IMG/VR virus record: IMGVR_UViG_3300042934_000547
Location: 62,001-126,000 of that record
DNA: 64,000 nucleotides
Strand: one strand, 5' to 3'
Both the position numbers and the translations under genes were made by a program. This document shows positions 9,930-55,369 of this stretch, one piece after another. The notes under the pieces are model-generated. The model worked only from the letters and a program-made list of their open reading frames with translations. It was not told the DNA's origin and ran no database searches. The first letter of the stretch is position 1. Every line of letters starts with the position of its first letter.

Positions 9930-10619
9930 TTATTGGAAACTAAAATCTATACAACCATCGATTTCATTGTATTTAATTCTAGCAGATTTTAGTTTTACTT
10001 CTCCAGATTGTGACTCTACGCTTCCTAAAGCAGAAACATCACCACTGTTTTTGACATCTAATAATTTTCTATATGTATCTGGAGCTCCAATACTTGTAGC
10101 CTCAAATGCAAACGATGATTCAACATCATCTACTATAGAAAACTTTTGTTTAAGTTCACCGTTATTTTGATGGATAGCACCAAAATCCCCAGTACCTAAT
10201 GTAATTATTTCACCAAGAGCAGTTGGTTTATAATCGATTTTCATAAATCCAGATGCATTTATTCCAGCTAATGTGTCAGCATCCAACCCACTACCTGCTC
10301 CATCATTACCACTATGCCATAATTTAAATTCAGTTCCATCCTTTTTCTGAATAAAGGCATCACCATCTGTTGCTCTTAAGAATGTATCTTTGGTTATATC
10401 CTCAGTATGTTTAAATAATAAACCATGTCCCATTACATCTGATTTAATTACCTCTATGCCATTAGCACCAATAATACTAGTACCATTTAATGACAGCCCT
10501 ACTTTGCTGAATGCAACACCAGCATTCGGAATTGTAATCATTATACCTTTGCCTGCTTTAATATATTCCTCGGCACGTATATCCCCATATATTATCACAT
10601 CATGTAGTGTATTATACAT
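9930..10619 (-). CDS. Tail fibre protein, 229 aa
   Basis: WHSGNDGAGSGLDADTLAG tail-fibre motif; C-terminus VKLKSARIKYNEIDGCIDFSFQ resembles the C-terminus of 3705..4892. Confidence 0.75.
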   Translation of the reverse strand: MYNTLHDVIIYGDIRAEEYIKAGKGIMITIPNAGVAFSKVGLSLNGTSIIGANGIEVIKSDVMGHGLLFKHTEDITKDTFLRATDGDAFIQKKDGTEFKLWHSGNDGAGSGLDADTLAGINASGFMKIDYKPTALGEIITLGTGDFGAIHQNNGELKQKFSIVDDVESSFAFEATSIGAPDTYRKLLDVKNSGDVSALGSVESQSGEVKLKSARIKYNEIDGCIDFSFQ

Positions 10620-10653
10620 TATTATTCTCCTTTCTTTGTGAAAGATTTTTAAT

Positions 10654-10665
10654 TATTAAAATGTT
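10654..10665 (-). promoter_or_regulatory. Late-type phage promoter (AACA-N6-TA) for the tail-fibre operon
   Basis: Minus strand AACATTTTAATA, ~35 nt upstream of the 10619 start; same motif precedes terminase and portal. Confidence 0.6.
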
Positions 10666-10684
10666 CAATAATACCGTCAAATCA

Positions 10685-11273
10685 CAAAAAATAAAGCACT
10701 GACGATTAAGCCAGTGCCCGGCTTCCAAATTATTTATATAATCCCGAGTATATCTTATAATTTGGATTCCTCTCCTAATGGTAACTCTCTACTCATTAGG
10801 ATAGTTTGTTACACACTGATTTCTCCCACTAAACCAGTGTCTATTAACCTGCTAAGTATAACAATTTATCATACACGTAAAAAGTATAATATTTACTATT
10901 TCGTTATATATGATATCTGATACACCAATGTATACCTAATCGATAATGTGACATTGATATACCAACTATTTATAAAGTTATATCATCTTTCTCCTAAAGT
11001 GATAGATAACTCTGTTCCGGTTTTGTTATACTCATGCAGTCTTATCTCATGTAAGTAAACCATGAAACAAAATTTTCCCCGAATCACAATTTCTAAATGC
11101 GTACCCCATACACATTCAGTAAATTCCCTAGCTTAATTTCACGTCGATTAGATATATTTCTTACGCTTCGACATTTAATTAAACCGTACACGTCCTCCCT
11201 TTTATGTATTTACTTTAGTTTCCCACACTAAAGTATCAGAATGACGATCAATATTACATTTATATCATCATTC
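10685..11273 (-). ncRNA. Putative ~590-nt highly structured non-coding RNA with G-rich (GGGA/GGAG) hairpin loops
   Basis: Bounded by an early promoter (11271-11296) and a terminator (10696-10717); no convincing long ORF on the transcribed strand; at least 12 hairpins, the first starting at the predicted +1. Confidence 0.65.
10696..10717 (-). terminator. Intrinsic terminator ending the putative ncRNA
   Basis: GCACTGGC-TTAATC-GTCAGTGC followed by TTTATTTTTT on the minus strand. Confidence 0.8.
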
Positions 11274-11296
11274 AAATCTATAATATATATTTGAAA
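11271..11296 (-). promoter_or_regulatory. Early-type phage promoter (26-bp element)
   Basis: Minus strand TTTCAAATATATATTATA-GATT-TGAA; one of 12 copies. Confidence 0.75.
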
Positions 11297-11313
11297 TATT
11301 TCAATTTTACACT

Positions 11314-11343
11314 AAAAAAGAAGAGTAGAAATTAATCTACTCT
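11314..11343 (-). terminator. Intrinsic terminator after the helicase operon
   Basis: AGAGTAGA-TTAATT-TCTACTCT followed by TCTTTTTT. Confidence 0.8.
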
Positions 11344-11348
11344 CGATA

Positions 11349-11474
11349 TTATTTTTCTTTGTTTATATTAAATATATCCTCATCATTAACGATAAGATTT
11401 ATAACATTCCCGTCAACTCTGGTAACAATTATTTTATCATGACCATCCATATGAATATCCATAGATACACTCAT
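11349..11474 (-). CDS. Small hypothetical protein, 41 aa (MSVSMDIHMDGHDKIIVTRVDGNVINLIVNDEDIFNINKEK)
   Basis: Hand-translated; TAATG overlap with the helicase stop, AGGAG upstream. Confidence 0.55.
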   Translation of the reverse strand: MSVSMDIHMDGHDKIIVTRVDGNVINLIVNDEDIFNINKEK

Positions 11475-13033
11475 TATTTATTTCTCCTTATTGGTATTAT
11501 TCGCCTATCGATTCCCTTTGGCAACATAGGTAATTCACCAATCAATAAATTATTAGATTTTTTAAGAGCTTCTTGACCTTTAAAATACACATCATCATCA
11601 TTAAGTCTGAATTCAGTACAAGATTTAGCCAATCTTGTGTATATAGGCTTTCTATATCTATAATAATCATTGATTGCTTTAAATCCTAAATCAATTAAAT
11701 CGTAATATTCAGTATCCATTCCTCTAGTACGACCAAAGGATTGTTCTGCTAATATTTTTGATTTAAATGGTTCAGCAATATTATTTACAGATTGTAAGTC
11801 CTTAACGTCACTTGCTGTACCTAAAGACTTTGTTGTAGATAATATAATTCTTTTATCAAGTTGCTCCAATTTTATTCCTTTTGGAGTATATGTAGTGTAA
11901 ATGCCTAGCTGGTCTTCTATTAATGGGAATGTGTTAATCAAGTAGTCGTACACTACCAGTATAGCGGCATTTGTGGCTATATAAAATATGTTCTTCTTAC
12001 CATTATGGAGTGCTTTATATAGTAATATATTTAGCATATTATAAAAAGAAGGTTCTTTTACGATATACATAGAGTAAGCGTTTTTATCAAACCCATATAC
12101 ATTCTTACATCTTGATATAACAGTCGGTGTTGGTCTTGAATTATATATCAAAGCTTTATAATGAGTATGTGGATCATTTTCTTCATCGTAAAGTGATATA
12201 GACGGAACATTCTTAAAATATAACTGAAATATCTTATTTGCTCTATCATCAGACTTACCCGGAGTTGCTGTTACATAAAATGTCTTATATGTATTAGTAT
12301 AGAAATCAATCTTACATACGTTATCAAAGTTAAGATGTGCTTCATCATATACTTTAATACCAATTTTCATATATCGGAATAATTCAGTTATTTTATCCCA
12401 TCCTCTGGTATCTCCATATGATTTAATAGTATCATGTGATGCTATAATATACTTTATATCACTGATATCTTTTCTATGAAATAATCTGTCGATACTACCA
12501 GCACCTTGGATAAAATAAACGCCTTGTGGTCTGGTATCAGTATAATCATAAACGCATTTCTTCCACTGTGTCATCCAGTCATTATAAGACATAATGATTA
12601 TACTTCTAAGCTGTAATTTAGCTATAGAAGTGATTGTACAATATGTCTTACCTTTACCTGTTTTTAAATTGATTGATAACTGCGATTTACGTTGATTATT
12701 AGGATATTTGCCCTCACCACACATGAAATCAATCGTTTCTAGTTGAACGTCATTACGTGGTTTATACCTAACCTTAATCTGGTCTACTTTATCCTTTGGA
12801 TCACCATTATAAACAACGTTAGCATTGGTATTGAATAACCTTTCTAGATAGAGAATATCAATACCCCTTGGAATAATAAGTCGTTTTTCTTTTTCAATAT
12901 ATTCCATACACATCTCGATGTGTTTATGAGTTAACGGGTCCCATAATTTAAAGTTATATTCTAGCTGTTTACAATCGCCAAGATTGTAATCATTAATAAC
13001 AATTTTGGTACTATAAACATCAATTTTAGCCAT
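11474..13033 (-). CDS. SF2 (DExH, UvsW-like) helicase, 519 aa
   Basis: Walker A LKTGKGKT, Walker B VYDEAH, motif III TATP, motif VI EQSFGRTRG. Confidence 0.85.
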   Translation of the reverse strand: MAKIDVYSTKIVINDYNLGDCKQLEYNFKLWDPLTHKHIEMCMEYIEKEKRLIIPRGIDILYLERLFNTNANVVYNGDPKDKVDQIKVRYKPRNDVQLETIDFMCGEGKYPNNQRKSQLSINLKTGKGKTYCTITSIAKLQLRSIIIMSYNDWMTQWKKCVYDYTDTRPQGVYFIQGAGSIDRLFHRKDISDIKYIIASHDTIKSYGDTRGWDKITELFRYMKIGIKVYDEAHLNFDNVCKIDFYTNTYKTFYVTATPGKSDDRANKIFQLYFKNVPSISLYDEENDPHTHYKALIYNSRPTPTVISRCKNVYGFDKNAYSMYIVKEPSFYNMLNILLYKALHNGKKNIFYIATNAAILVVYDYLINTFPLIEDQLGIYTTYTPKGIKLEQLDKRIILSTTKSLGTASDVKDLQSVNNIAEPFKSKILAEQSFGRTRGMDTEYYDLIDLGFKAINDYYRYRKPIYTRLAKSCTEFRLNDDDVYFKGQEALKKSNNLLIGELPMLPKGIDRRIIPIRRNK

Positions 13034-21056: not shown

Positions 21057-21137
21057 CGATTTATAATTAAAATATCGACTCCAAACATCATTTTAGCTAT
21101 ATATTATATCAGTGAGAATAATAAAGGAGATATTAAT

Positions 21138-24747: not shown

Positions 24748-26946
24748 ATGCTCATTCCTGCTAATGGATTTGGGGATCAAATACCAATTTCCACCCAAGG
24801 TCCAGTGCCTATTAAAAACAGTGGTCCCACTATCTATTATCAATTAAATACAAAGAATCAATCGTTTCTTGATATGCATTATTATCTGAGAGATATCGGT
24901 GTACAGAATAACCTGTTTATGCTCGCATTGTTAGACCCAGATTTGAAGGATGTAGATCCTCATGATAAAAATCTAAGTCCAATAATGAAAACAAAAGTAT
25001 TTAATGAAGTTCAACGAAATTTCTGGTATTTTGCTAGAGAAGTAGTTAGAATCCCTATGGAGGGTGCTACTACTGCTGATATGCCTAGATATGAACTTCA
25101 TAGAGGTAACTTAGCACTCAACTATTGTTTTTTACTAAATTTGAATATATTCCTAGAATTACCTCGTCAGAACTTTAAGACCATGTCTGCCGAAGTTTGG
25201 TATTTATGGGTATTTAACTTTGCCACTTCTAAATCTAAAATGGGATTCTTCCATAAAGACCATAGCGGTTCAAAGCAGAACTTAAAAGAGTTAAAAGAAT
25301 TAAGAGAAGCATTACCAGATTATCTTAAAATGGATAAGATTTTTTCAACAGACCAGAAAGGACCATTAAAGAAGAAATCTACAGTAGAAACATTAGAGCA
25401 CTTAGTTAATGGAAACGGTATCGTAACATTTGCATCTGCTAGAACTAAAGCAGCAGCTATGACAGCAGCCAGAGGTATGCACGTTCCTATGTTATGGTAT
25501 GATGAGTTTGCGTTTATTTCACATATAAAAATTATTTATGATACAGCCGTTCCTGCTATATCAAAAGCTTCTGAGAATGCTAGACGATTTGGTAAACCAT
25601 ACGGTACACTGGTTACTACAACACCGGGTTTGTTAACAACTGACGAAGGAATCTTCGCATATGCTGCTAAAGAAAATGCTACTAAATTTAATGAACGTAT
25701 GTATGATATGCCTCTTAATGAATTATATACATTCTTAAGAAAGAATAACCGTTCATCATTCATGTATATTAAATTTAACTATAAAGAACTCGGTAGAGGC
25801 GAAGCTTATATTTCACATATGGCTAGAGAATATGGTGGTAGCTGGACAGCATTCAGACGAGAAATTCTCCTTGAGTGGACTGAAGTATCTGATAAATCTC
25901 CATTTGAACCTGCTGAACTTGACTTAGTTAAGAGATTGGTAAAACAGCCTATATATAAGATACCTTTAATGAAAGGACAATTTGAATTAGAAGTATTCGA
26001 AAAATTAGATAATAGTGCAAAATATCCTCCAATAATGGGTGTCGACGTTTCCGGAGGTATCAAACGTGACTCATCTACTATAACTATCATAAATTCTGAA
26101 ACCACTAGGGTTGCTGCGGTATTTAATAGTAACTTTATTTCTCAGGGTGATTTAGCTAGAGTTATATACGAAATAGTCAAGGTCTGGTTACCTAATGCAT
26201 TAATCGTAGTAGAAGAGAATGGTGGATTCGGTCGAGCTGTAATAGCCGAATTAATGAAGACTGAGCTACGTAAAAATCTTTACAAGGAGCTTAGGGAAAG
26301 AGTTACTGAAGAAAGATTTAGTGGTATGGGTAAGTCTACCAAAACAAAATCATTCCAATATGTGTATGGTATTACAAGTAATAAACAGTTAAGAGAAGAA
26401 ATGATGGAACTTCTTAGAGAAAGAATGGAATTACATAAAGACAAATTCGTTTCTCAGATTATATATGATGAATTAGCTGGACTTGAAGTATCTGCTAGAG
26501 GGAAAGTTGACCATAGTAGTAACACACATGATGACCAGATAATTAGTATGCTTCTTGCATTATATGTGTGGTATTATGGACAAGATTTACGTAGTCGATA
26601 TGGTATCAATAAGAAAACATTGCAGACAGACCAAAATGTAGAAATAATTAATGAAGATATCGGTTCACCTCAAGCTAATATAACTGAAGAACTTAATACA
26701 GAACCAGATGAAAAGATAAGCAATCTTCAACAAGTTTTGAATACAATGTATGATAAACGTTTGACTGAAGAACAATTCTTCCAAAAAATGCGTAATGATG
26801 ACCATAAAGCATGGGTTGATTATATTAATTCTCCTTATGGTAAATTTGATGCAACTTATGGAACGAATGGTGTTATATTAGTCAATTCAGAAGATTTGCA
26901 AAACGGTCGTATTCCTCAATCGGTATTTACCGATTTTTATAACTAA
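24748..26946 (+). CDS. terL: Terminase large subunit, 732 aa
   Basis: FWYFAREV, Walker A LPRQNFKT, Walker B LWYDEFAF, coupling motif TTTPG, nuclease GVDVSGG..RDSS and HDDQIIS. Confidence 0.9.
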   Translation: MLIPANGFGDQIPISTQGPVPIKNSGPTIYYQLNTKNQSFLDMHYYLRDIGVQNNLFMLALLDPDLKDVDPHDKNLSPIMKTKVFNEVQRNFWYFAREVVRIPMEGATTADMPRYELHRGNLALNYCFLLNLNIFLELPRQNFKTMSAEVWYLWVFNFATSKSKMGFFHKDHSGSKQNLKELKELREALPDYLKMDKIFSTDQKGPLKKKSTVETLEHLVNGNGIVTFASARTKAAAMTAARGMHVPMLWYDEFAFISHIKIIYDTAVPAISKASENARRFGKPYGTLVTTTPGLLTTDEGIFAYAAKENATKFNERMYDMPLNELYTFLRKNNRSSFMYIKFNYKELGRGEAYISHMAREYGGSWTAFRREILLEWTEVSDKSPFEPAELDLVKRLVKQPIYKIPLMKGQFELEVFEKLDNSAKYPPIMGVDVSGGIKRDSSTITIINSETTRVAAVFNSNFISQGDLARVIYEIVKVWLPNALIVVEENGGFGRAVIAELMKTELRKNLYKELRERVTEERFSGMGKSTKTKSFQYVYGITSNKQLREEMMELLRERMELHKDKFVSQIIYDELAGLEVSARGKVDHSSNTHDDQIISMLLALYVWYYGQDLRSRYGINKKTLQTDQNVEIINEDIGSPQANITEELNTEPDEKISNLQQVLNTMYDKRLTEEQFFQKMRNDDHKAWVDYINSPYGKFDATYGTNGVILVNSEDLQNGRIPQSVFTDFYN

Positions 26947-26999: not shown

Positions 27000-27791
27000 A
27001 TGATCCCAAGTAATCATTTAAATAACAATGATTTCGAAGCTGCTAATAAATATCTAGCAACAAATGTGATGCAACATTTTTCGCCTGAGTTTATAACTTC
27101 TATCATTGACGAAAAGTTTGCAACTAGAGATAAACTTGATTATGGTTTTAGTAATAATGCCATTGAACTTTTGGAGGCGAATTATATTTCTGTATTACAG
27201 CAAACAAATAGTGCTGAATTAGCAGAAAACAGGATTCAAACTTATAAGAATATCATCAATAAGATCGCTGATTATAATAAGATTAATATCAATCAGATTT
27301 TATTAAATGATCCGGATACAGATTTGTATGCTATAGCCAAGTTACTATACGAACTATTAGTGCTTGGCTATAGAGATTATCTATTAATATTCATGACTAA
27401 TTTCATCATGAATGAAATAAATAATCTATATAACATAGCTGAATTGTCAGAGTGTAAAAAGAATAAGGATGTAACAACTGTTAGTCTTAAAAAACAATAT
27501 AGCGGTAAGAAACTTCCATATATTGTCGCTAATCTTGATAAGATTATCCAGTGTATACCATATAATTACACACTGACATTATCATCAATAATCAGCTATA
27601 TCATGCCAGAACGTGGTGACGTTTTAAATACACTCAATGAGTTAATCGATAATGATAATAATTTCTTTGTTAATAATTACGTTAACTCAATGCTTTATGG
27701 GAACTTTAAGGTTGATATTCTGGTAGGTTTGAAACTAGAGTTAAATAACAAAATCAATTTAATTGAGAATAATACAATAAAGGAGAACTAA
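27000..27791 (+). CDS. Putative virion structural protein, 263 aa
   Basis: First of three genes between terL and sheath, the arrangement seen in phiKZ-like phages. Confidence 0.55.
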   Translation: MIPSNHLNNNDFEAANKYLATNVMQHFSPEFITSIIDEKFATRDKLDYGFSNNAIELLEANYISVLQQTNSAELAENRIQTYKNIINKIADYNKININQILLNDPDTDLYAIAKLLYELLVLGYRDYLLIFMTNFIMNEINNLYNIAELSECKKNKDVTTVSLKKQYSGKKLPYIVANLDKIIQCIPYNYTLTLSSIISYIMPERGDVLNTLNELIDNDNNFFVNNYVNSMLYGNFKVDILVGLKLELNNKINLIENNTIKEN

Positions 27792-29879: not shown

Positions 29880-31649
29880 ATGGCTACTATTAACGTTAAA
29901 GGATATCCAGCTCTAACTCAATATGTAACTGATGAAAGTGCTATCCAAGAAAGCATAAATATGCTCGAAGGTGGTCCGATTATATTAGCTGCATGTGCAA
30001 CTGATAGAGGTCGTGAAGATATGTACTTGTGTAACGATGTTAATCAATTTATAGCTGAGCATGGACCAATAAACTTTAAAAAATACGGTCAAGTTCAAAA
30101 ACAAATAGAAAAAAATTTAGCTGCCGGAGGAAGGGTTTTATTTAAGAGAATCGTAGCACCAGCTGCTACTTTAGCTAATATAGTCGTAGTTGCTACAGTT
30201 ACTAACGACGAAATTGGAGATAAAGTCACAATTAAATATACTATTGAAACTATTCCAAATGCTAAAACAATCGCTGATGTGGAAACTGGCATAACAGCAT
30301 TATCAGTAACTGTAGATGGTGCACCTAAATCTTATCCGATTTTTGCTATTGCAGAAGTTGGCAGAGGTGCGTCTGTTAAGAGAATCAAAATCAAACCGGA
30401 TTATGATGGAAGTGAAGCGTTAGCATACATGCAATACGCAATGGAAATCGAAACTGAATTGGCAACAAAGATTGTTAAATTTGGTTTAGATCCTGACAGA
30501 TTCGATGTAATAAATAGAGGTATAAGATCTAGAGGTAATGCATCTGGTATTATAAAAGTTGCTAATACTGATAGATATCTTAAAGGATTTTTACAAGATA
30601 CTGCTGCTGAAATGAAAGTTACTGACATCAATATTTATGATTTACTTTGCGGTAAAGATAAAGAAGGTGAAGTAGATGAGCACATAGCATTAGATGCTAC
30701 ATCAATTTCATTATCACCTGAGTTTGGTCTAGCAATGGCTAGTGGTAATGCAGGTGAGTTTGAAGGTGATGTATATGTACCAGAAGTTGCAGCTTTTGAA
30801 ACAGGCTTAACAGCTTTCTATACAGGTACTACTACTCCAGAAATCTGGAATACTACTAAGTATAAAATTGCTCTTGTATTCGGTGCTAATTTCTCTAAAC
30901 CAGTTAACCAAGCAATTGTTGATTTGGTTAAATGGAGAGAAGATGCAACTTTCATCAAAGACTTTGGATTAAATTTAAGGACATTAGAAGAAATCGATGC
31001 AGCTGTTAAAGCTGATGGTGTTGATACTCCATATGTTGTAAATTATCCTATATCATATGATATAATTGATCCAAATTCAGGAGTTCAGGAAACAGTTACA
31101 GCTAACTATGATTTAGCTAGTGGACTTGTAAGAAGATTAATCAATGGACCTCATGTACCATTTGCTGGTGCTAGAAATGGGGCTGTATTGGAGTCAGCAA
31201 TCGAAGGAACATTAAACTTCGAACCAATTGATACTCCACACATTCAACAAAAGAAAGCTATGAAGAAATTAAGAGCAAACTATGCTTCTTTCATAGATGG
31301 CATTCTTACTGTAGAAACATTGTGGACTAGTCAAAAGGCTTATACTCAGTTATCATTCTCAAATAACGTATTTGAGTTACAAGATATCATGAGAGATACT
31401 GTTAAAGTTGCTCTAACTAACAGATATTCATTTACTAATCCATCTGATCTTGATAATTACAAGAAAGATATTAATGATAATATCATCAGTAAGCATACGG
31501 GCAGATTGAAGAAGCTTGAGTTTAAATACGCTTCTGATACTATTCTTGAAAATCAGAAAGTATACTATGGTGTGTACACAATCATACCATGGAATTTCAA
31601 TCAGGAAGAAGCATTTGAATATCTCATCAAAAATGATGAGGCAAATTAG
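29880..31649 (+). CDS. Tail sheath protein, 589 aa
   Basis: GPINFKKYGQ...AGGRVLFKRIV N-terminus; sheath-like C-terminal region (LRANYA...ETLWTSQ...LSFSNNV..LQDI); followed by a tube-sized gene. Confidence 0.8.
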   Translation: MATINVKGYPALTQYVTDESAIQESINMLEGGPIILAACATDRGREDMYLCNDVNQFIAEHGPINFKKYGQVQKQIEKNLAAGGRVLFKRIVAPAATLANIVVVATVTNDEIGDKVTIKYTIETIPNAKTIADVETGITALSVTVDGAPKSYPIFAIAEVGRGASVKRIKIKPDYDGSEALAYMQYAMEIETELATKIVKFGLDPDRFDVINRGIRSRGNASGIIKVANTDRYLKGFLQDTAAEMKVTDINIYDLLCGKDKEGEVDEHIALDATSISLSPEFGLAMASGNAGEFEGDVYVPEVAAFETGLTAFYTGTTTPEIWNTTKYKIALVFGANFSKPVNQAIVDLVKWREDATFIKDFGLNLRTLEEIDAAVKADGVDTPYVVNYPISYDIIDPNSGVQETVTANYDLASGLVRRLINGPHVPFAGARNGAVLESAIEGTLNFEPIDTPHIQQKKAMKKLRANYASFIDGILTVETLWTSQKAYTQLSFSNNVFELQDIMRDTVKVALTNRYSFTNPSDLDNYKKDINDNIISKHTGRLKKLEFKYASDTILENQKVYYGVYTIIPWNFNQEEAFEYLIKNDEAN

Positions 31650-46703: not shown

Positions 46704-46756
46704 TTTGTTGTTTCCTCCTAAAATTTTAATATTTTGTAAGTATATTTATTTCATGA

Positions 46757-46782
46757 TTCATAAGTATAATATATACTTATAA
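46757..46782 (-). promoter_or_regulatory. Early-type phage promoter
   Basis: TTATAAGTATATATTATA-CTTA-TGAA. Confidence 0.7.
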
Positions 46783-46832
46783 TCATTTTTAATTCTATAT
46801 GGATGTCCTATTGATATTAATAAAAAATAAAT

Positions 46833-46857
46833 ATAGGGATGATTAACTCATCCCTAT
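46833..46857 (-). terminator. Intrinsic terminator
   Basis: ATAGGGATGA-GTTAA-TCATCCCTAT then ATTTATTTTTT. Confidence 0.75.
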
Positions 46858-46861
46858 GTAT

Positions 46862-53853: not shown

Positions 53854-53879
53854 TTCACTAATATAATATATATTTATTT
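53854..53879 (-). promoter_or_regulatory. Early-type phage promoter (overlaps the recA stop)
   Basis: AAATAAATATATATTATA-TTAG-TGAA. Confidence 0.6.
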
Positions 53880-55110
53880 ATCCTATTAAGCTTAGTAAAG
53901 ACATTGTGTCGCTAACTGGTGGTGAAGCTATTTCTAAACTTTCATTCTCTTTTATGTATGGTCTCAATATAGTTAAAGCTTCCTCAATAGCAATCCTTTG
54001 TAATACAGGATCAGTTCGGAATTTATTCTTAAAGTCTTTTTGGGAAAATGTGACTTCTTTACGGTCTCCTATATAGAAACTCCTACCACCACCATTAAGA
54101 ACCTTATTCTTTTTAAATAAGGTAAGTAATGACATCTCATAATCAAATCCAATTTCTTGATTAAATAGCAATGGAACCGATTTACCTGATTTATTAGTCC
54201 TCGTTTTGACAATCTCAAAGTCGGCTACGTTACCATCTATATCATAGTTGCCTTCACCTTTCGATTCTCCTTCAACCAATTTACCACCGTCATTAATCCT
54301 GAACATATTTGATGCTGAATAATTAGCAGTTCTACCACCCGGTAATGTCTCACCCGGTTTTAAATAAGGTAATGAGGCTTTTTTAGGAGTTGCTGATATA
54401 TCCTCAAGTATATGATTAATTAGTATTAGTATTATATTAGCTTTCTTACATACCGGAATCACTCTCTTAAATATACCTGTATTAGTTTTAGCCGCTGATG
54501 TAGCTGCATAACCACCTGTTAAATCATCTTCGCTTGCGAAATTCTCAGGTAACAAATAGGCTAGACTATCAAGTATATAAACTGTAGGTACATACTTAAT
54601 TATAGGATTACCCATTCTATCAAAATGACCAGTATCATATTGAAATTTATCTGGATTGGATATTTTTAAATTTGCTATAGTTTTTAAACGAGTAAAAAAG
54701 TTTTCTGCTGTTATACCTTCATTTCGTCCTCGATAACAACTGTCAAATGTATCCATATCAAATTTAAGTAATTCAATCTTTCTCTCAGTAAGCATACCGA
54801 CTTCAACTAAATCCTCTAATATTAATCCACCTTTATCTATAAATGGTCTAATAATATTGCCAGCAATCTGTGTTGCTAGAGTTGATTTACCGCATCCACT
54901 TCGACCTATAATAATATTAGTAGAGCCATCTGCTATACCTAAAATATTATAATTGTACAATTCTCCATTTGGTTTAAGACCAGTAGCTTGTCTTCCATTT
55001 CTGAAGTCAATTGCTAAAAATCCTGTGGGATATCCAATATCACTACTAAGATATAATGGATCTCCTATCTTCTTCAATTCCTTCTTATATGATTCACTTA
55101 AATCATGCAT
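53878..55110 (-). CDS. recA: RecA/UvsX-like recombinase, 410 aa
   Basis: PTGFLAIDF, Walker A GRSGCGKST, Walker B YILDSLA, ILINHI, PGGRTANYSAS, IVKTR. Confidence 0.85.
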   Translation of the reverse strand: MHDLSESYKKELKKIGDPLYLSSDIGYPTGFLAIDFRNGRQATGLKPNGELYNYNILGIADGSTNIIIGRSGCGKSTLATQIAGNIIRPFIDKGGLILEDLVEVGMLTERKIELLKFDMDTFDSCYRGRNEGITAENFFTRLKTIANLKISNPDKFQYDTGHFDRMGNPIIKYVPTVYILDSLAYLLPENFASEDDLTGGYAATSAAKTNTGIFKRVIPVCKKANIILILINHILEDISATPKKASLPYLKPGETLPGGRTANYSASNMFRINDGGKLVEGESKGEGNYDIDGNVADFEIVKTRTNKSGKSVPLLFNQEIGFDYEMSLLTLFKKNKVLNGGGRSFYIGDRKEVTFSQKDFKNKFRTDPVLQRIAIEEALTILRPYIKENESLEIASPPVSDTMSLLSLIG

Positions 55111-55137
55111 AATAACACCCTCCTGATAATCTTATCT

Positions 55138-55149
55138 CACTATAATGTT
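55138..55149 (-). promoter_or_regulatory. Late-type promoter for recA
   Basis: Minus strand AACATTATAGTG (AACA-N6-TG). Confidence 0.55.
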
Positions 55150-55164
55150 CCGCTATACATAAAA

Positions 55165-55300
55165 AAGAAAAAAAAAGAAGTCGAAGGGGGACTTACGGCT
55201 TCTTTTTTATAAATATAATTTATGGGGTAAATTAGAAGTAAGGGGTGGAATTAGTCAATCATCCTGTATGATGATTGATTTATATTACCACTTCTAATTC
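55165..55300 (-). ncRNA. Putative ~135-nt small RNA with a CAGGAUG apical hairpin and C-rich segments
   Basis: Early promoter at 55298-55323; 5' end pairs as AATTAGAAGT/ACTTCTAATT; inner stem TCAATCATC/GATGATTGA; terminator hairpin with a UCCCC loop and long U tract; no ORF. Confidence 0.7.
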
Positions 55301-55323
55301 ATATTTATAATATATATTTGAAA
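55298..55323 (-). promoter_or_regulatory. Early-type phage promoter
   Basis: TTTCAAATATATATTATA-AATA-TGAA. Confidence 0.75.
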
Positions 55324-55344
55324 ATCTTTTTAAAGGGACAAAAA

Positions 55345-55368
55345 AGAAAGAGAAATTAATCTCTTTCT
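55345..55368 (-). terminator. Intrinsic terminator after the tubulin operon
   Basis: AGAAAGAGA-TTAATT-TCTCTTTCT followed by TTTT. Confidence 0.8.
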
Positions 55369-55369
55369 A

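What the first reader, a model, noticed from the sequence alone, without database searches (positions are those of the whole stretch)
10685..11273. ~590-nt phage non-coding RNA of back-to-back hairpins displaying GGGA/GGAG loops (candidate protein-sponge RNA)
Seen: a self-contained unit of early promoter (11271-11296), ~590 nt without a convincing ORF, and terminator (10696-10717). The first 10-bp helix (11239-11273) starts at the predicted +1. Hairpins follow almost without gaps: 11211-11235 (loop GUGGGAA), 11186-11208 (AAAAGGGAGGAC), 11141-11174, 11121-11139 (AAGCUAGGG), 11093-11119 (UGGGG), 11070-11092 (UUCGGGGAA), 10981-11004 (AGGAG), 10926-10956, 10867-10915, 10813-10840 (AGUGGGAG), 10773-10801, 10724-10766 (CUCGGGAU). 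About 12 GGA trinucleotides occur, most in loops or linkers. Known: CsrB/RsmZ-type RNAs titrate CsrA/RsmA through repeated GGA loops; large ornate RNAs (ROOL, GOLLD) occur in Firmicutes and their phages. Inference: an early phage RNA that decoys an SD/GGA-binding protein (CsrA, a translational repressor, or a GGA-cleaving anti-phage RNase), or a new ornate RNA class. I do not recognise it as a described phage RNA.
Basis: partly seen in the sequence, partly recalled or inferred. Interest (0 to 1): 0.85.

Follow-up and report, generated by a model that had tools for sequence, protein, structure and literature searches.

The report
Orphan structured early RNA, jumbo phage
An uncultured giant phage related to Bacillus phage AR9 carries a self-contained early gene that makes a roughly 585-base, very tightly folded RNA with no protein-coding potential and with G-rich loops left exposed; no relative of it was found in about 2.7 Mb of related jumbo-phage DNA or the public collections searched, so its role, most plausibly a decoy for a host or phage RNA-binding factor, is still a hypothesis.

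Summary
Window 11273 to about 10688 (- strand) is a discrete unit. It starts at an exact match to the experimentally defined AR9 virion-RNA-polymerase early promoter (AAATATATATTAT-N6-G, +1 = G11273). It ends at a strong hairpin plus U-tract terminator (10719-10694). A separate AR9-type late promoter then drives the next gene.

No frame is open, no piece resembles any protein, and the source's gene caller called nothing there. The RNA folds far better than controls: MFE -170 kcal/mol, z = -8.7 against shuffles, and rank 1 of 1,060 genomic windows. It is more than serial hairpins, because a 16-bp long-range helix closes a three-arm domain.

GGA is not over-represented (12 against 11.2 expected), so this is not a CsrB-like dense sponge, and no Rfam family matches. 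But G-runs are kept unpaired far more often than chance (GGGA 5 against 0.45; loops with GGR 6 against 1.0), and no complementary pyrimidine tract exists in the RNA.

No homolog was found in about 2.7 Mb of related jumbo-phage DNA or in public phage records, so covariation cannot be tested.

Other phages of the clade have non-homologous ORF-less units behind the same promoter, some of them arrays of GGA-bearing hairpins.

Best reading: a stable early non-coding RNA that acts in trans as a decoy or scaffold. Its existence as an RNA gene is fairly secure; its function is inferred.

The parts
11321..11344 (-). Intrinsic terminator that ends the upstream early operon (helicase plus the 41-aa ORF)
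   Evidence: Hairpin of 9 pairs followed by CTTTTTT. It isolates the RNA unit from upstream transcription.
11273..11292 (-). Early (virion RNA polymerase type) promoter. AAATATATATTAT lies at 11292-11280, followed by a 6-nt spacer, with +1 = G11273.
   Evidence: Exact match to the AR9 early consensus. The same motif recurs upstream of early-type genes in the window.
10688..11273 (-). Predicted primary transcript of about 585 nt, non-coding
   Evidence: No ORF longer than 38 aa, and stops in all frames. No protein or RNA family match. No gene called by the source's gene caller. MFE -170 kcal/mol, z -8.7; rank 1 of 1,060 windows.
11239..11273 (-). 5'-terminal 10-bp stem-loop that includes the +1 nucleotide
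   Evidence: Pair probability 0.98. Similar 5'-terminal stems open three other long-leader early transcripts.
11211..11235 (-). 9-bp hairpin with loop GUGGGAA
   Evidence: Pair probability 0.98.
11192..11203 (-). Single-stranded AAAAGGGAGGAC, the strongest SD-like site
   Evidence: Duplex with the anti-SD is -12 kcal/mol, and G-core unpaired probability is 0.69. The next start codon, GUG, is only 2 nt away.
11130..11185 (-). Composite hairpin: 9-bp outer helix plus 7-bp inner helix
   Evidence: Pair probabilities 0.97 and 0.98.
11086..11127 (-). Hairpin of 5 + 12 bp with a GGG(G) loop, preceded by the unpaired linker AGGGAA
   Evidence: Pair probabilities 0.88 and 0.98.
11073..11085 (-). Single-stranded GAUUCGGGGAAAA
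   Evidence: Unpaired in both the MFE and centroid structures.
11040..11072 (-).
   Evidence: Pair probability 0.96.
10849..11039 (-). Three-arm multibranch domain closed by a 16-bp long-range helix (11039-11023 with 10864-10849). Its arms are 11013-10974 (loop AGGAG), 10965-10917 (15-bp stem) and 10915-10867.
   Evidence: Closing-helix pair probability 0.97-0.99. A perfect 10-nt inverted repeat lies 158 nt apart (I13).
10810..10843 (-). 10-bp hairpin with loop AGUGGGAG
   Evidence: Pair probability 0.99.
10773..10801 (-). 8 + 4-bp hairpin with loop AGAG, followed by the linker GAGAGGAA
   Evidence: Pair probabilities 0.98 and 0.88.
10720..10770 (-). Hairpin of 2 + 10 + 5 bp with loop CUCGGGAU
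   Evidence: Pair probability 0.87-0.97.
10688..10719 (-). Intrinsic terminator of the RNA: GGCACUGGC / GUCAGUGCU stem followed by UUAUUUUUU
   Evidence: In AR9, predicted terminators stop transcription strongly.
10654..10665 (-). AR9-type late promoter AACATTTTAATA (+1 = A10654) for the 229-aa fibre-like gene (10619-9930). It is not part of the RNA and marks the unit's downstream limit.
   Evidence: The consensus is AACA-N6-TA/G. The same AACAT-N5-T[A/G] motif lies 14-43 nt upstream of 7 operon-leading genes in the window.

Best explanation
The region is a stand-alone gene for a stable non-coding RNA of about 585 nt. The phage's virion-packaged RNA polymerase transcribes it immediately after infection, from an AR9-type early promoter, and an intrinsic terminator ends it.

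The RNA folds co-transcriptionally into about a dozen very stable helices. These include a 5'-terminal stem, inferred to protect the 5' end from Firmicute 5' exonuclease. They also include a three-arm domain closed by a long-range helix.

This scaffold holds about nine G-rich elements (GGGA, GGGG, GGAG) in loops and linkers. These elements have no complementary partner inside the RNA.

The most likely mode of action is in trans. The exposed GGGR/GGAG elements bind, and so titrate or organise, a host or phage factor that recognises ribosome-binding-site-like or GGA-type RNA motifs. Candidates are a CsrA-type translational regulator, another RBS-binding repressor, or an RNA-cleaving enzyme.

What is shown: the promoter, the terminator, the absence of coding capacity, the exceptional fold, and the non-random exposure of G-runs. 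What is inferred: that the RNA accumulates, that it acts in trans, and what it binds.
For: (1) Promoter and terminator:
- The promoter is identical to the experimentally mapped AR9 vRNAP consensus, with +1 at G11273.
- The motif is 60-fold over-represented and sits upstream of early-type genes such as the RNAP beta subunit and DNA polymerase.
- Terminators flank the unit on both sides, and such terminators work in AR9.
- The downstream gene has its own late promoter.

(2) Non-coding:
- ORFs and stops.
- No protein similarity.
- No gene called there.

(3) Structure:
- z = -8.74.
- Coding controls gave z from +2.9 to -4.6, and the other intergenic gaps mostly about 0 to -2.5, with 46704-46861 (-3.2 to -3.9) and 55111-55369 (-5.2 to -7.0) as exceptions.
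- Rank 1 of 1,060 windows.
- Helix pair probabilities are above 0.95.
- The RNA strand folds 59 kcal/mol better than its complement.
- In strand-neutral helices, G-U outnumbers A-C 17 to 4.

(4) Display of G-runs against 300 shuffles:
- Unpaired GGA: 8 against 2.4 (p 0.003).
- Unpaired GGG: 7 against 1.4 (0 of 300).
- Unpaired GGGA: 5 against 0.45 (0 of 300).
- Hairpin loops with GGR: 6 against 1.0 (0 of 300).
- The RNA has no UCCC, UUCC or CUCC, and its only two UCC are buried in stems.

(5) Clade context:
- Behind the same early promoter, other jumbo phages carry non-homologous ORF-less structured units.
- One conserved type has 4-5 copies of a GAGGAU-bearing hairpin, with GGA at 19 against 12.5 expected (p 0.004). 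Another has 11 RGGAUUAUUG hairpins.
- The closest relative has a 280-nt structured ORF-less leader at the same position, with GGG(G) loops.
Against: - No homolog was found, so there is no conservation or covariation evidence. The whole segment, including both flanking small genes, is unique to this one contig.
- GGA is not enriched in number, and strong SD-like sites are not enriched.
- The hairpins are not repeats of one unit, unlike proven decoy arrays.
- The G-U against A-C excess is only suggestive once the G-rich composition is allowed for.
- There are no expression data.
- The host is unknown; there are only weak Lachnospiraceae and Peptostreptococcaceae hints.
Confidence: 0.4

Rival explanations
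1. It is a large self-folding 'ornate' RNA whose function lies in its own three-dimensional or multimeric architecture, as proposed for ROOL and GOLLD. On this reading the GGGA/GGAA-type loops act as GNRA-like tertiary contacts rather than as protein-binding sites.
For: - Its size, 589 nt, is in the ROOL range.
- It is phage-borne.
- It has a multibranch domain closed by a 16-bp long-range helix.
- Its folding stability is exceptional.
- GGGA fits the GNRA pattern.
- A 13-nt complementarity links the tips of two distant hairpins, 11144-11156 with 10931-10943 (I4).
Against: - No match to ROOL, GOLLD or any other Rfam model, even at E<=10.
- Most helices are simple local hairpins with few internal loops or junctions.
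- No receptor-like motifs were identified.
- No homologs exist to show a conserved architecture.
Confidence: 0.15
2. It is a transcribed but functionless spacer. This lineage-specific stretch would be built from decaying palindromes or remnants of lost genes that sit between an early and a late operon. The promoter and terminator would be left over from a lost early gene.
For: - The segment and both neighbouring small genes are orphans found in a single contig.
- The closest relative has a different, shorter sequence at the same place, followed by a gene.
- There is no evidence of conservation.
Against: - A z-score of -8.7 and rank 1 of 1,060 windows are not expected for decayed coding sequence, given the coding and intergenic controls.
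- There is no residual protein similarity in any frame.
- The hairpins are not copies of a dispersed repeat.
- G-U pairs exceed A-C mismatches 17 to 4 on the transcribed strand.
- G-runs are non-randomly kept out of helices.
Confidence: 0.17
3. It is a cis-acting element rather than a trans-acting RNA. One version is an insulator or timing device between early and late transcription. Another is a transcription-activated replication origin of the R-loop type, as in T4 ori(uvsY) and ori(34), placed beside the replication genes.
For: - It lies directly downstream of the superfamily-II helicase operon and about 10 kb from the DNA polymerase.
- It has a promoter with no gene to express.
- AR9 also has an early promoter followed by an ORF-poor unit just before a late structural operon.
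Against: - Its base composition matches the rest of the genome (31.9% against 30.7% GC), so there is no AT-rich unwinding element.
- The strand asymmetry of the fold and the G-U pairs point to selection on the RNA and not on the DNA.
- A strong terminator argues for release of a discrete RNA.
- No iterons or direct repeats are present.
Confidence: 0.1
4. It is an mRNA for one or more very small proteins, or it is a ribosome/30S decoy acting through its Shine-Dalgarno-like sequences.
For: - Four G-rich elements are followed within 2-8 nt by AUG or GUG, giving ORFs of 32, 22, 6 and 2 codons (sequence).
- GGGAGGA and AGGAGAGGAA pair well with the anti-SD, at -12 and -10.4 kcal/mol.
- SD-like 5' stabilisers are known in Firmicutes (own knowledge: STAB-SD, and the SP82 polypurine stabiliser).
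Against: - The spacing of the best SD to its GUG is only 2 nt.
- The start codons are buried in stable stems.
- No ORF piece has any homolog or was called as a gene.
- Strong SD-like sites are no more frequent than chance (2 against 3.2 in shuffles and 2.0 in genomic windows).
Confidence: 0.08

Closest known systems
Early transcription units of Bacillus phage AR9/PBS1 (virion RNA polymerase promoters; Lavysh et al. 2017, PMC5312081)
   Same: - The promoter sequence and +1 position are identical.
- The late-promoter consensus is the same, next door.
- Intrinsic terminators are present.
- Long structured leaders exist: AR9 5' UTRs reach 491 nt.
- AR9 itself has an early promoter (181,705) followed by an ORF-poor, terminated unit of about 230 nt upstream of late gene g214.
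   Different: AR9 early promoters are described as serving protein genes, and the paper text searched never uses the words noncoding, non-coding or hairpin. The unit here is 585 nt, has no ORF, and has no sequence similarity to anything in the 250 kb of AR9 fetched, all but the last 1,042 bp of the genome.
CsrB/CsrC/RsmX/Y/Z protein-sponge sRNAs
   Same: Both are stand-alone, terminated non-coding RNAs made of stem-loops, with GGA-containing motifs exposed in loops and linkers. Here 8 of 12 GGA are unpaired.
   Different: - No covariance-model match.
- GGA density is 1 per 49 nt, equal to chance, against about 1 per 15-20 nt in Csr/Rsm RNAs (own knowledge).
- The stems are much longer, at 9-16 bp.
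- The source is a phage of a probable Firmicute host, where no Csr sponge RNA is known (own knowledge).
ROOL and GOLLD large ornate RNAs of Firmicutes and their phages
   Same: Similar size class, association with phages, unknown biochemical function, and a multi-domain fold.
   Different: No model match even at E<=10. No tRNA genes nearby. No family of homologs. The architecture is dominated by plain hairpins.
Repeat-array decoy RNAs: ToxI-type antitoxin RNAs, phage pseudo-ToxI, RNA anti-CRISPRs (own knowledge), and the hairpin arrays found here in related jumbo phages (L183, L284, L285, L286; L138, L163)
   Same: All are phage-borne ORF-less transcripts made of several stem-loops. In the related jumbo phages they sit behind the same early promoter and are bounded by terminators.
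   Different: Those RNAs repeat one unit 4-11 times. The window's hairpins all differ: the only direct repeat is a 14-nt two-copy match between two loops (D4).

Membership tests
Csr/Rsm sponge sRNAs | Matches a curated covariance model (CsrB, CsrC, RsmX/Y/Z and relatives) | tested here: not met
   No Rfam match at gathering score in the window. At E<=10 in 10500-11500 there were only snoRNA, miRNA and tmRNA noise hits.
Csr/Rsm sponge sRNAs | GGA motifs far denser than base composition predicts | tested here: not met
   12 GGA in 589 nt against 11.2 +/- 2.3 in dinucleotide shuffles (p about 0.45).
Csr/Rsm sponge sRNAs | GGA placed in hairpin loops or single-stranded linkers | tested here: met
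   8 of 12 GGA are unpaired against 2.4 expected (p 0.003). 6 hairpin loops carry GGR against 1.0 expected (0 of 300 shuffles).
Csr/Rsm sponge sRNAs | Binds and titrates CsrA/RsmA, and the host encodes CsrA | not testable with these tools
   The host is unknown. Related helicases occur in MAGs labelled Lachnospiraceae and Peptostreptococcaceae, which is only a weak hint.
ROOL / GOLLD ornate large RNAs | Matches the family covariance model | tested here: not met
ROOL / GOLLD ornate large RNAs | Conserved across many genomes, with covariation supporting a complex fold | tested here: inconclusive
   No homolog was found, so covariation cannot be assessed. Searches run:
- blastn against 50,697 phage records.
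- nhmmer and blastn on about 2.7 Mb of related loci, including 250 kb of AR9.
- A covariance model of the 191-nt domain over 925 kb.
- A pattern of promoter plus 5' end in IMG/VR.
AR9-type early (virion RNA polymerase) transcription unit | Promoter AAATATATATTAT-(6N)-G+1 | tested here: met
   Exact match at 11292-11273. The consensus comes from PMC5312081.
AR9-type early (virion RNA polymerase) transcription unit | The same motif recurs upstream of early-type genes, and the phage encodes a multisubunit RNA polymerase | tested here: met
   14 matches against 0.23 expected. The motif lies upstream of the RNAP beta homolog, the DNA polymerase and others.
AR9-type early (virion RNA polymerase) transcription unit | Transcript detected early and independent of protein synthesis | not testable with these tools
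   The phage is uncultured and no expression data are available here.
Protein-coding gene (standard or recoded) | Open frame with a usable ribosome-binding site, or stops of a single reassignable type | tested here: not met
   The longest ORF on the RNA strand is 38 aa and runs through the terminator. Every frame has 7-9 TAA plus TGA and TAG.
Protein-coding gene (standard or recoded) | Similarity of any frame piece to known proteins | tested here: not met
   - Pfam and PHROGs: none at E<=1.
- tblastn of 32 pieces against 1.23 Mb of relatives: nothing below E 0.01.
- tblastn of three pieces against all phage records: no match.
- No piece is in the 15-billion-protein collection.
Repeat-array decoy RNAs (ToxI-like, RNA anti-CRISPR, clade hairpin arrays) | Several near-identical repeat units | tested here: not met
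   Only two-copy matches of 10-22 nt were found. There is no similarity to the L183-type or L138-type units.
Shine-Dalgarno decoy / STAB-SD-type element | More strong anti-SD-complementary sites than chance | tested here: not met
   2 sites at -8 kcal/mol or better, against 3.2 +/- 1.4 in shuffles and 2.0 +/- 1.5 in genomic windows.

The most novel reading that the evidence does not exclude
The RNA is one instance of a clade-wide strategy of AR9-like gut jumbo phages. Each phage would express, from virion-polymerase early promoters, its own fast-evolving 'hairpin display' RNA. Examples are this 585-nt RNA, the GAGGAU hairpin arrays of L183, L284 and L285, and the RGGAUUAUUG arrays of L138 and L163. 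These RNAs would soak up a host GGA- or RBS-recognising factor within minutes of infection. That factor could be CsrA of the flagellar CsrA-FliW circuit, which would be apt for relatives of flagellotropic PBS1/AR9. It could instead be an RNA-targeting defence enzyme. This would be the first RNA-based host-takeover or anti-defence decoy class in jumbo phages, and the first CsrA-type sponge RNA acting in Firmicutes.
Probability: 0.15. Interest if true: 0.85.

Novelty: new variant of a known kind. Interest (0 to 1): 0.6.

Why it matters
Large stand-alone non-coding RNAs are rare in phages, and none has been described for the AR9/PBS1-like jumbo phages. This unit is made by the injected virion polymerase, so it belongs to the first wave of host takeover.

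If it is a decoy, it would show that jumbo phages use RNA, and not only proteins, to neutralise host RNA-binding regulators or RNA-directed defences. It would also give a handle on a host factor in gut Clostridia.

The promoter grammar is shared with AR9, which grows on Bacillus subtilis. The general idea is therefore testable in a tractable system: the early ORF-poor unit at AR9 181.7 kb.

If it is instead a lineage-specific leftover, it is a caution. Extreme folding z-scores can arise in orphan intergenic DNA without conservation.

Tried and rejected
Homolog searches, all negative:
- blastn 'distant' against phage GenBank records.
- nhmmer and blastn against 80 helicase-anchored IMG/VR loci, against 117 loci comprising AR9 and promoter-pattern matches, and against 80 metagenome loci.
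- A covariance model of the three-arm domain over 925 kb, which returned only itself.
- An IMG/VR scan for promoter plus the first 9 nt of the RNA, which returned only self and unrelated promoters.
- Close-relative scans with the helicase in IMG/VR, JGI metagenomes and GTDB genomes, which returned self or nothing.
- Homologs of the flanking 229-aa and 41-aa proteins, sought as anchors: none.
- The closest relative (68% helicase identity, L003) aligns only over the promoter.

Rejected readings:
- Recoded or broken gene.
- tRNA or tmRNA cluster.
- Group I or II intron, riboswitch, 6S, ROOL, GOLLD or HEARO.
- Dispersed palindromic repeat element, or antisense regulator of another gene in the window: the longest match elsewhere is 15 nt.
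- Dense GGA sponge.
- SD or ribosome decoy.
- Mimic of the uracil-containing template strand of late promoters: only about three UGUU by eye, which is not above rough composition. This was not computed formally.

A crude screen for long ORF-less stretches behind early promoters first gave false positives, namely small genes and motifs overlapping start codons. It was then redone on 91 promoter instances.
Full report
**Source and context.**
The window is part of IMG/VR contig IMGVR_UViG_3300042934_000547 (232 kb). Its proteins place it among AR9/PBS1-like jumbo phages.
- It encodes a superfamily-II helicase (11474-13033, - strand) that is 34% identical to AR9 g156.
- It also encodes an RNA polymerase beta-subunit homolog and a DNA polymerase.

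Hundreds of metagenomic relatives exist. The nearest has only 68% helicase identity, and all those in IMG/VR, JGI metagenomes and GTDB are at or below 51%.

**The unit.**
On the - strand the layout is as follows.
- The helicase gene is followed by an orphan 41-aa ORF.
- A terminator (11344-11321) comes next.
- Then comes the sequence AAATATATATTAT-AGATTT-G.
- About 585 nt follow with no ORF longer than 38 aa.
- A strong terminator (10719-10694) with a U-run closes the unit.

The promoter is letter-for-letter the early consensus mapped by dRNA-seq and primer extension in AR9, AAATATATATTAT-(6N)-G+1. That consensus is used by the injected virion RNA polymerase (PMC5312081).

The motif is a real promoter class in this phage. 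There are 14 matches to the 21-mer against 0.23 expected. At least 11 copies of ATATATTATA-N4-TGAAT-like sequence lie upstream of genes.

Thirty-five nucleotides upstream of the next gene (229 aa, fibre-like) lies AACATTTTAATA. This matches the AR9 late consensus AACA-(6N)-TA/G. The same AACAT-N5-T[A/G] motif sits 14-43 nt upstream of seven operon-leading genes in the window.

The RNA unit is therefore sandwiched between an early operon and a late operon and belongs to neither. In AR9, predicted terminators stop transcription strongly, so a discrete RNA is expected.

**Not coding.**
- Every frame on both strands carries stops of all three kinds. The three RNA-strand frames carry 7-9 TAA each, which rules out TAG or TGA recoding.
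- As the operators advised, frame pieces were searched separately. Pfam and PHROGs gave nothing at E<=1.
- tblastn of 32 pieces against 1.23 Mb of related phage DNA, including AR9, gave nothing below E 0.01.
- tblastn of the three longest relevant pieces against 50,697 phage records gave no match.
- None of the pieces is in the 15-billion-protein collection, whereas the neighbouring 41-aa ORF is. The source's gene caller therefore also left the region empty.

**Structure.**
- The RNA strand folds to -170 kcal/mol against -117.9 +/- 6.0 for dinucleotide shuffles, z = -8.74.
- The complement reaches only -110.6 kcal/mol, z = -5.65.
- Fifteen coding segments of the same length gave z between +2.9 and -4.6.
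- Most other intergenic gaps gave about 0 to -2.5. The exceptions were 46704-46861 (-3.2 to -3.9) and 55111-55369.
- In a GC-adjusted scan of 1,060 windows of 589 nt on both strands, the region ranks first (z = -4.16). The four top windows all overlap it.
- The fold has 198 pairs, 26 of them G-U, and its helices have pair probabilities of 0.86-0.99.

The RNA is therefore not only a string of hairpins.

A helix finder that treats G-U and A-C alike found 17 G-U against 4 A-C on the transcribed strand. This fits selection on the RNA rather than on DNA palindromes. Given the G-rich composition, the test is suggestive only.

**The G-rich loops.**
GGA is not over-represented: 12 observed against 11.2 +/- 2.3 expected. 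What is non-random is where the G-runs sit. Results against 300 shuffles:

| Feature | Observed | Expected | Result |
|---|---|---|---|
| Unpaired GGA | 8 | 2.4 | p 0.003 |
| Unpaired GGG | 7 | 1.4 | 0 of 300 |
| Unpaired GGGA | 5 | 0.45 | 0 of 300 |
| Hairpin loops containing GGR | 6 | 1.0 | 0 of 300 |

The RNA contains no UCCC, UUCC or CUCC at all, and its only two UCC are buried in stems. The exposed G-runs therefore have no internal partner.

Only two sites pair strongly with the anti-Shine-Dalgarno sequence, which is no more than chance. A ribosome decoy is therefore not favoured. Start codons near the SD-like elements are badly spaced or locked in stems.

**No relatives.**
- The RNA has no match in phage GenBank records.
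- It has none in about 2.7 Mb of DNA from related jumbo phages. This DNA was fetched through the helicase, through the promoter motif, and as 250 kb of the AR9 genome.
- A covariance model of the three-arm domain found only itself in 925 kb.
- A scan of IMG/VR for the promoter plus the first nine transcribed bases found only unrelated promoters.
- Both flanking small genes are orphans too.

Covariation, the decisive computational test, therefore cannot be done with what is available.

**Context from relatives.**
- The closest relative (L003) has, right after its helicase, the same early promoter. A 280-nt ORF-less, strongly folded leader follows (z = -6.1), with GGG(G) loops, but no alignable sequence.
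- Among 91 early-promoter instances collected from IMG/VR, the median distance to the next ORF of at least 40 aa is 67 nt. Only 8 exceed 500 nt.
- Three of those 8 lie in jumbo-phage contigs and are strongly structured.
- One type (L183, L284, L285, L286) holds 2-5 exact copies per locus of the hairpin CUAGAGGAUAGGUAAUGUCUCUAG. It has a compensatory U-A to C-G variant and GGA enrichment (19 against 12.5, p 0.004).
- Another type (L138, L163) is built from tandem units of about 176 nt with 11 RGGAUUAUUG hairpins.
- None of these units matches Rfam.
- AR9 itself has an early promoter at 181,705 followed by an ORF-poor, terminated unit of about 230 nt upstream of late gene g214.

ORF-less structured units behind virion-polymerase promoters therefore recur in this clade, and several display repeated GGA-bearing hairpins. 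This gives indirect support to a display or decoy function for the window's RNA. The window's hairpins, however, are all different.

**Interpretation.**
The existence of a discrete, non-coding, highly structured early RNA gene is well supported; I put it at about 0.75. Its function is inferred.
- The reading I favour is a stable trans-acting decoy or scaffold that presents GGGR/GGAG elements to a host or phage RNA-binding factor. As a full statement I give it 0.4.
- The strict CsrB/RsmZ analogy fails two of its defining tests.
- Rivals are an ornate self-folding RNA, a transcribed lineage-specific leftover, a cis-acting element, and a small-ORF mRNA or SD decoy.

**Verdict.**
This is a real and unusual feature, not an artefact, and it belongs to no described RNA family. 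It is a single-genome orphan without conservation evidence, so interest is moderate to high (0.6) rather than the 0.85 first proposed.

Noticed in passing
L183:776-1321 (-), L284:5600-6130 (-), L285:330-710 (-), L286:28-87 (+): Related metagenomic jumbo phages carry a conserved ORF-less unit with 2-5 exact copies per locus of the hairpin CUAGAGGAUAGGUAAUGUCUCUAG. In L183 and L284 it sits behind the same early promoter. A UCAGAGG...CUCUGG variant is a compensatory U-A to C-G change. GGA occurs 19 times against 12.5 expected. There is no Rfam match. Each hairpin resembles a ribosome-binding site plus AUG. It looks like an undescribed hairpin-array RNA family.
   Followed up: partly
L138:8855-9553 (+), L163:6695-7197 (+): In two other jumbo-phage contigs, the early promoter is followed by 500-700 nt of ORF-less RNA. 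This RNA is built from tandem units of about 176 nt that carry 11 copies of an RGGAUUAUUG(C/A)GCC hairpin (z = -5.2 and -3.0). There is no Rfam match.
   Followed up: partly
L089:31705-31990 (AR9 KU878088 181,705-181,990): AR9 has an annotated early promoter followed by an ORF-poor unit of about 230 nt. The unit has a possible 15-codon ORF and a clear terminator, and lies just upstream of the late virion gene g214 (fold z = -4.2). A second annotated AR9 early promoter (227,688, + strand) points antisense into the late amidase gene g272.
   Followed up: partly
window 55111-55369: The 259-nt leader of the gene at 53878-55110 contains a long, near-perfect nested hairpin that starts at the early +1 (about 55299). 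It is the only other intergenic region with an extreme fold (z = -7.0 on the + strand, -5.2 on the - strand). It carries both an early and a late (AACATTATAGTG) promoter.
   Followed up: partly
window TSSs near 11273, 61993, 55299 and 39146 (- strand): Four of eleven early transcripts, those with leaders of 95 nt or more, begin with a stable stem that includes the first nucleotides (pairing probability 0.8-1.0). This probably protects the 5' end. Early transcripts with short leaders lack it.
   Followed up: partly
window 10654-10665, 21083-21094 and other sites upstream of genes starting at 24748, 29880, 34670, 37538 and 55110: The AR9 late-promoter consensus AACA-N6-TA/G is conserved in this distant relative as AACAT-N5-T[A/G], 14-43 nt upstream of seven operon-leading genes. 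This suggests the same template-strand promoter recognition by the non-virion polymerase.
   Followed up: partly
window 11144-11156 and 10931-10943: A 13-nt complementarity with one G-U links the apical parts of two hairpins 200 nt apart within the RNA. It could be a kissing contact or an alternative fold. Its significance was not assessed.
   Followed up: no
window 11349-11474 (-) and 9930-10619 (-): The 41-aa ORF upstream of the RNA has no homolog at all. The 229-aa fibre-like protein downstream has no full-length homolog among 5.8 billion proteins and shares only a short fibre motif with other proteins. The whole segment from the helicase stop to the fibre gene is therefore unique to this contig.
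   Followed up: yes
window 30241-31300 (+) and 27121-27600 (+): Two stretches inside + strand coding genes (29880-31649 and 27000-27791) are the next most stable folds in the window scan (z about -2.5 to -3.4). The cause is unknown.
   Followed up: no
L073:1921-2264 (+): A relative with 51% helicase identity has a short early unit: terminator, early promoter, a 5'-terminal hairpin, a long perfect hairpin with a U-tract, a GGGGG-loop hairpin, and then a second early promoter before the next gene.
   Followed up: no
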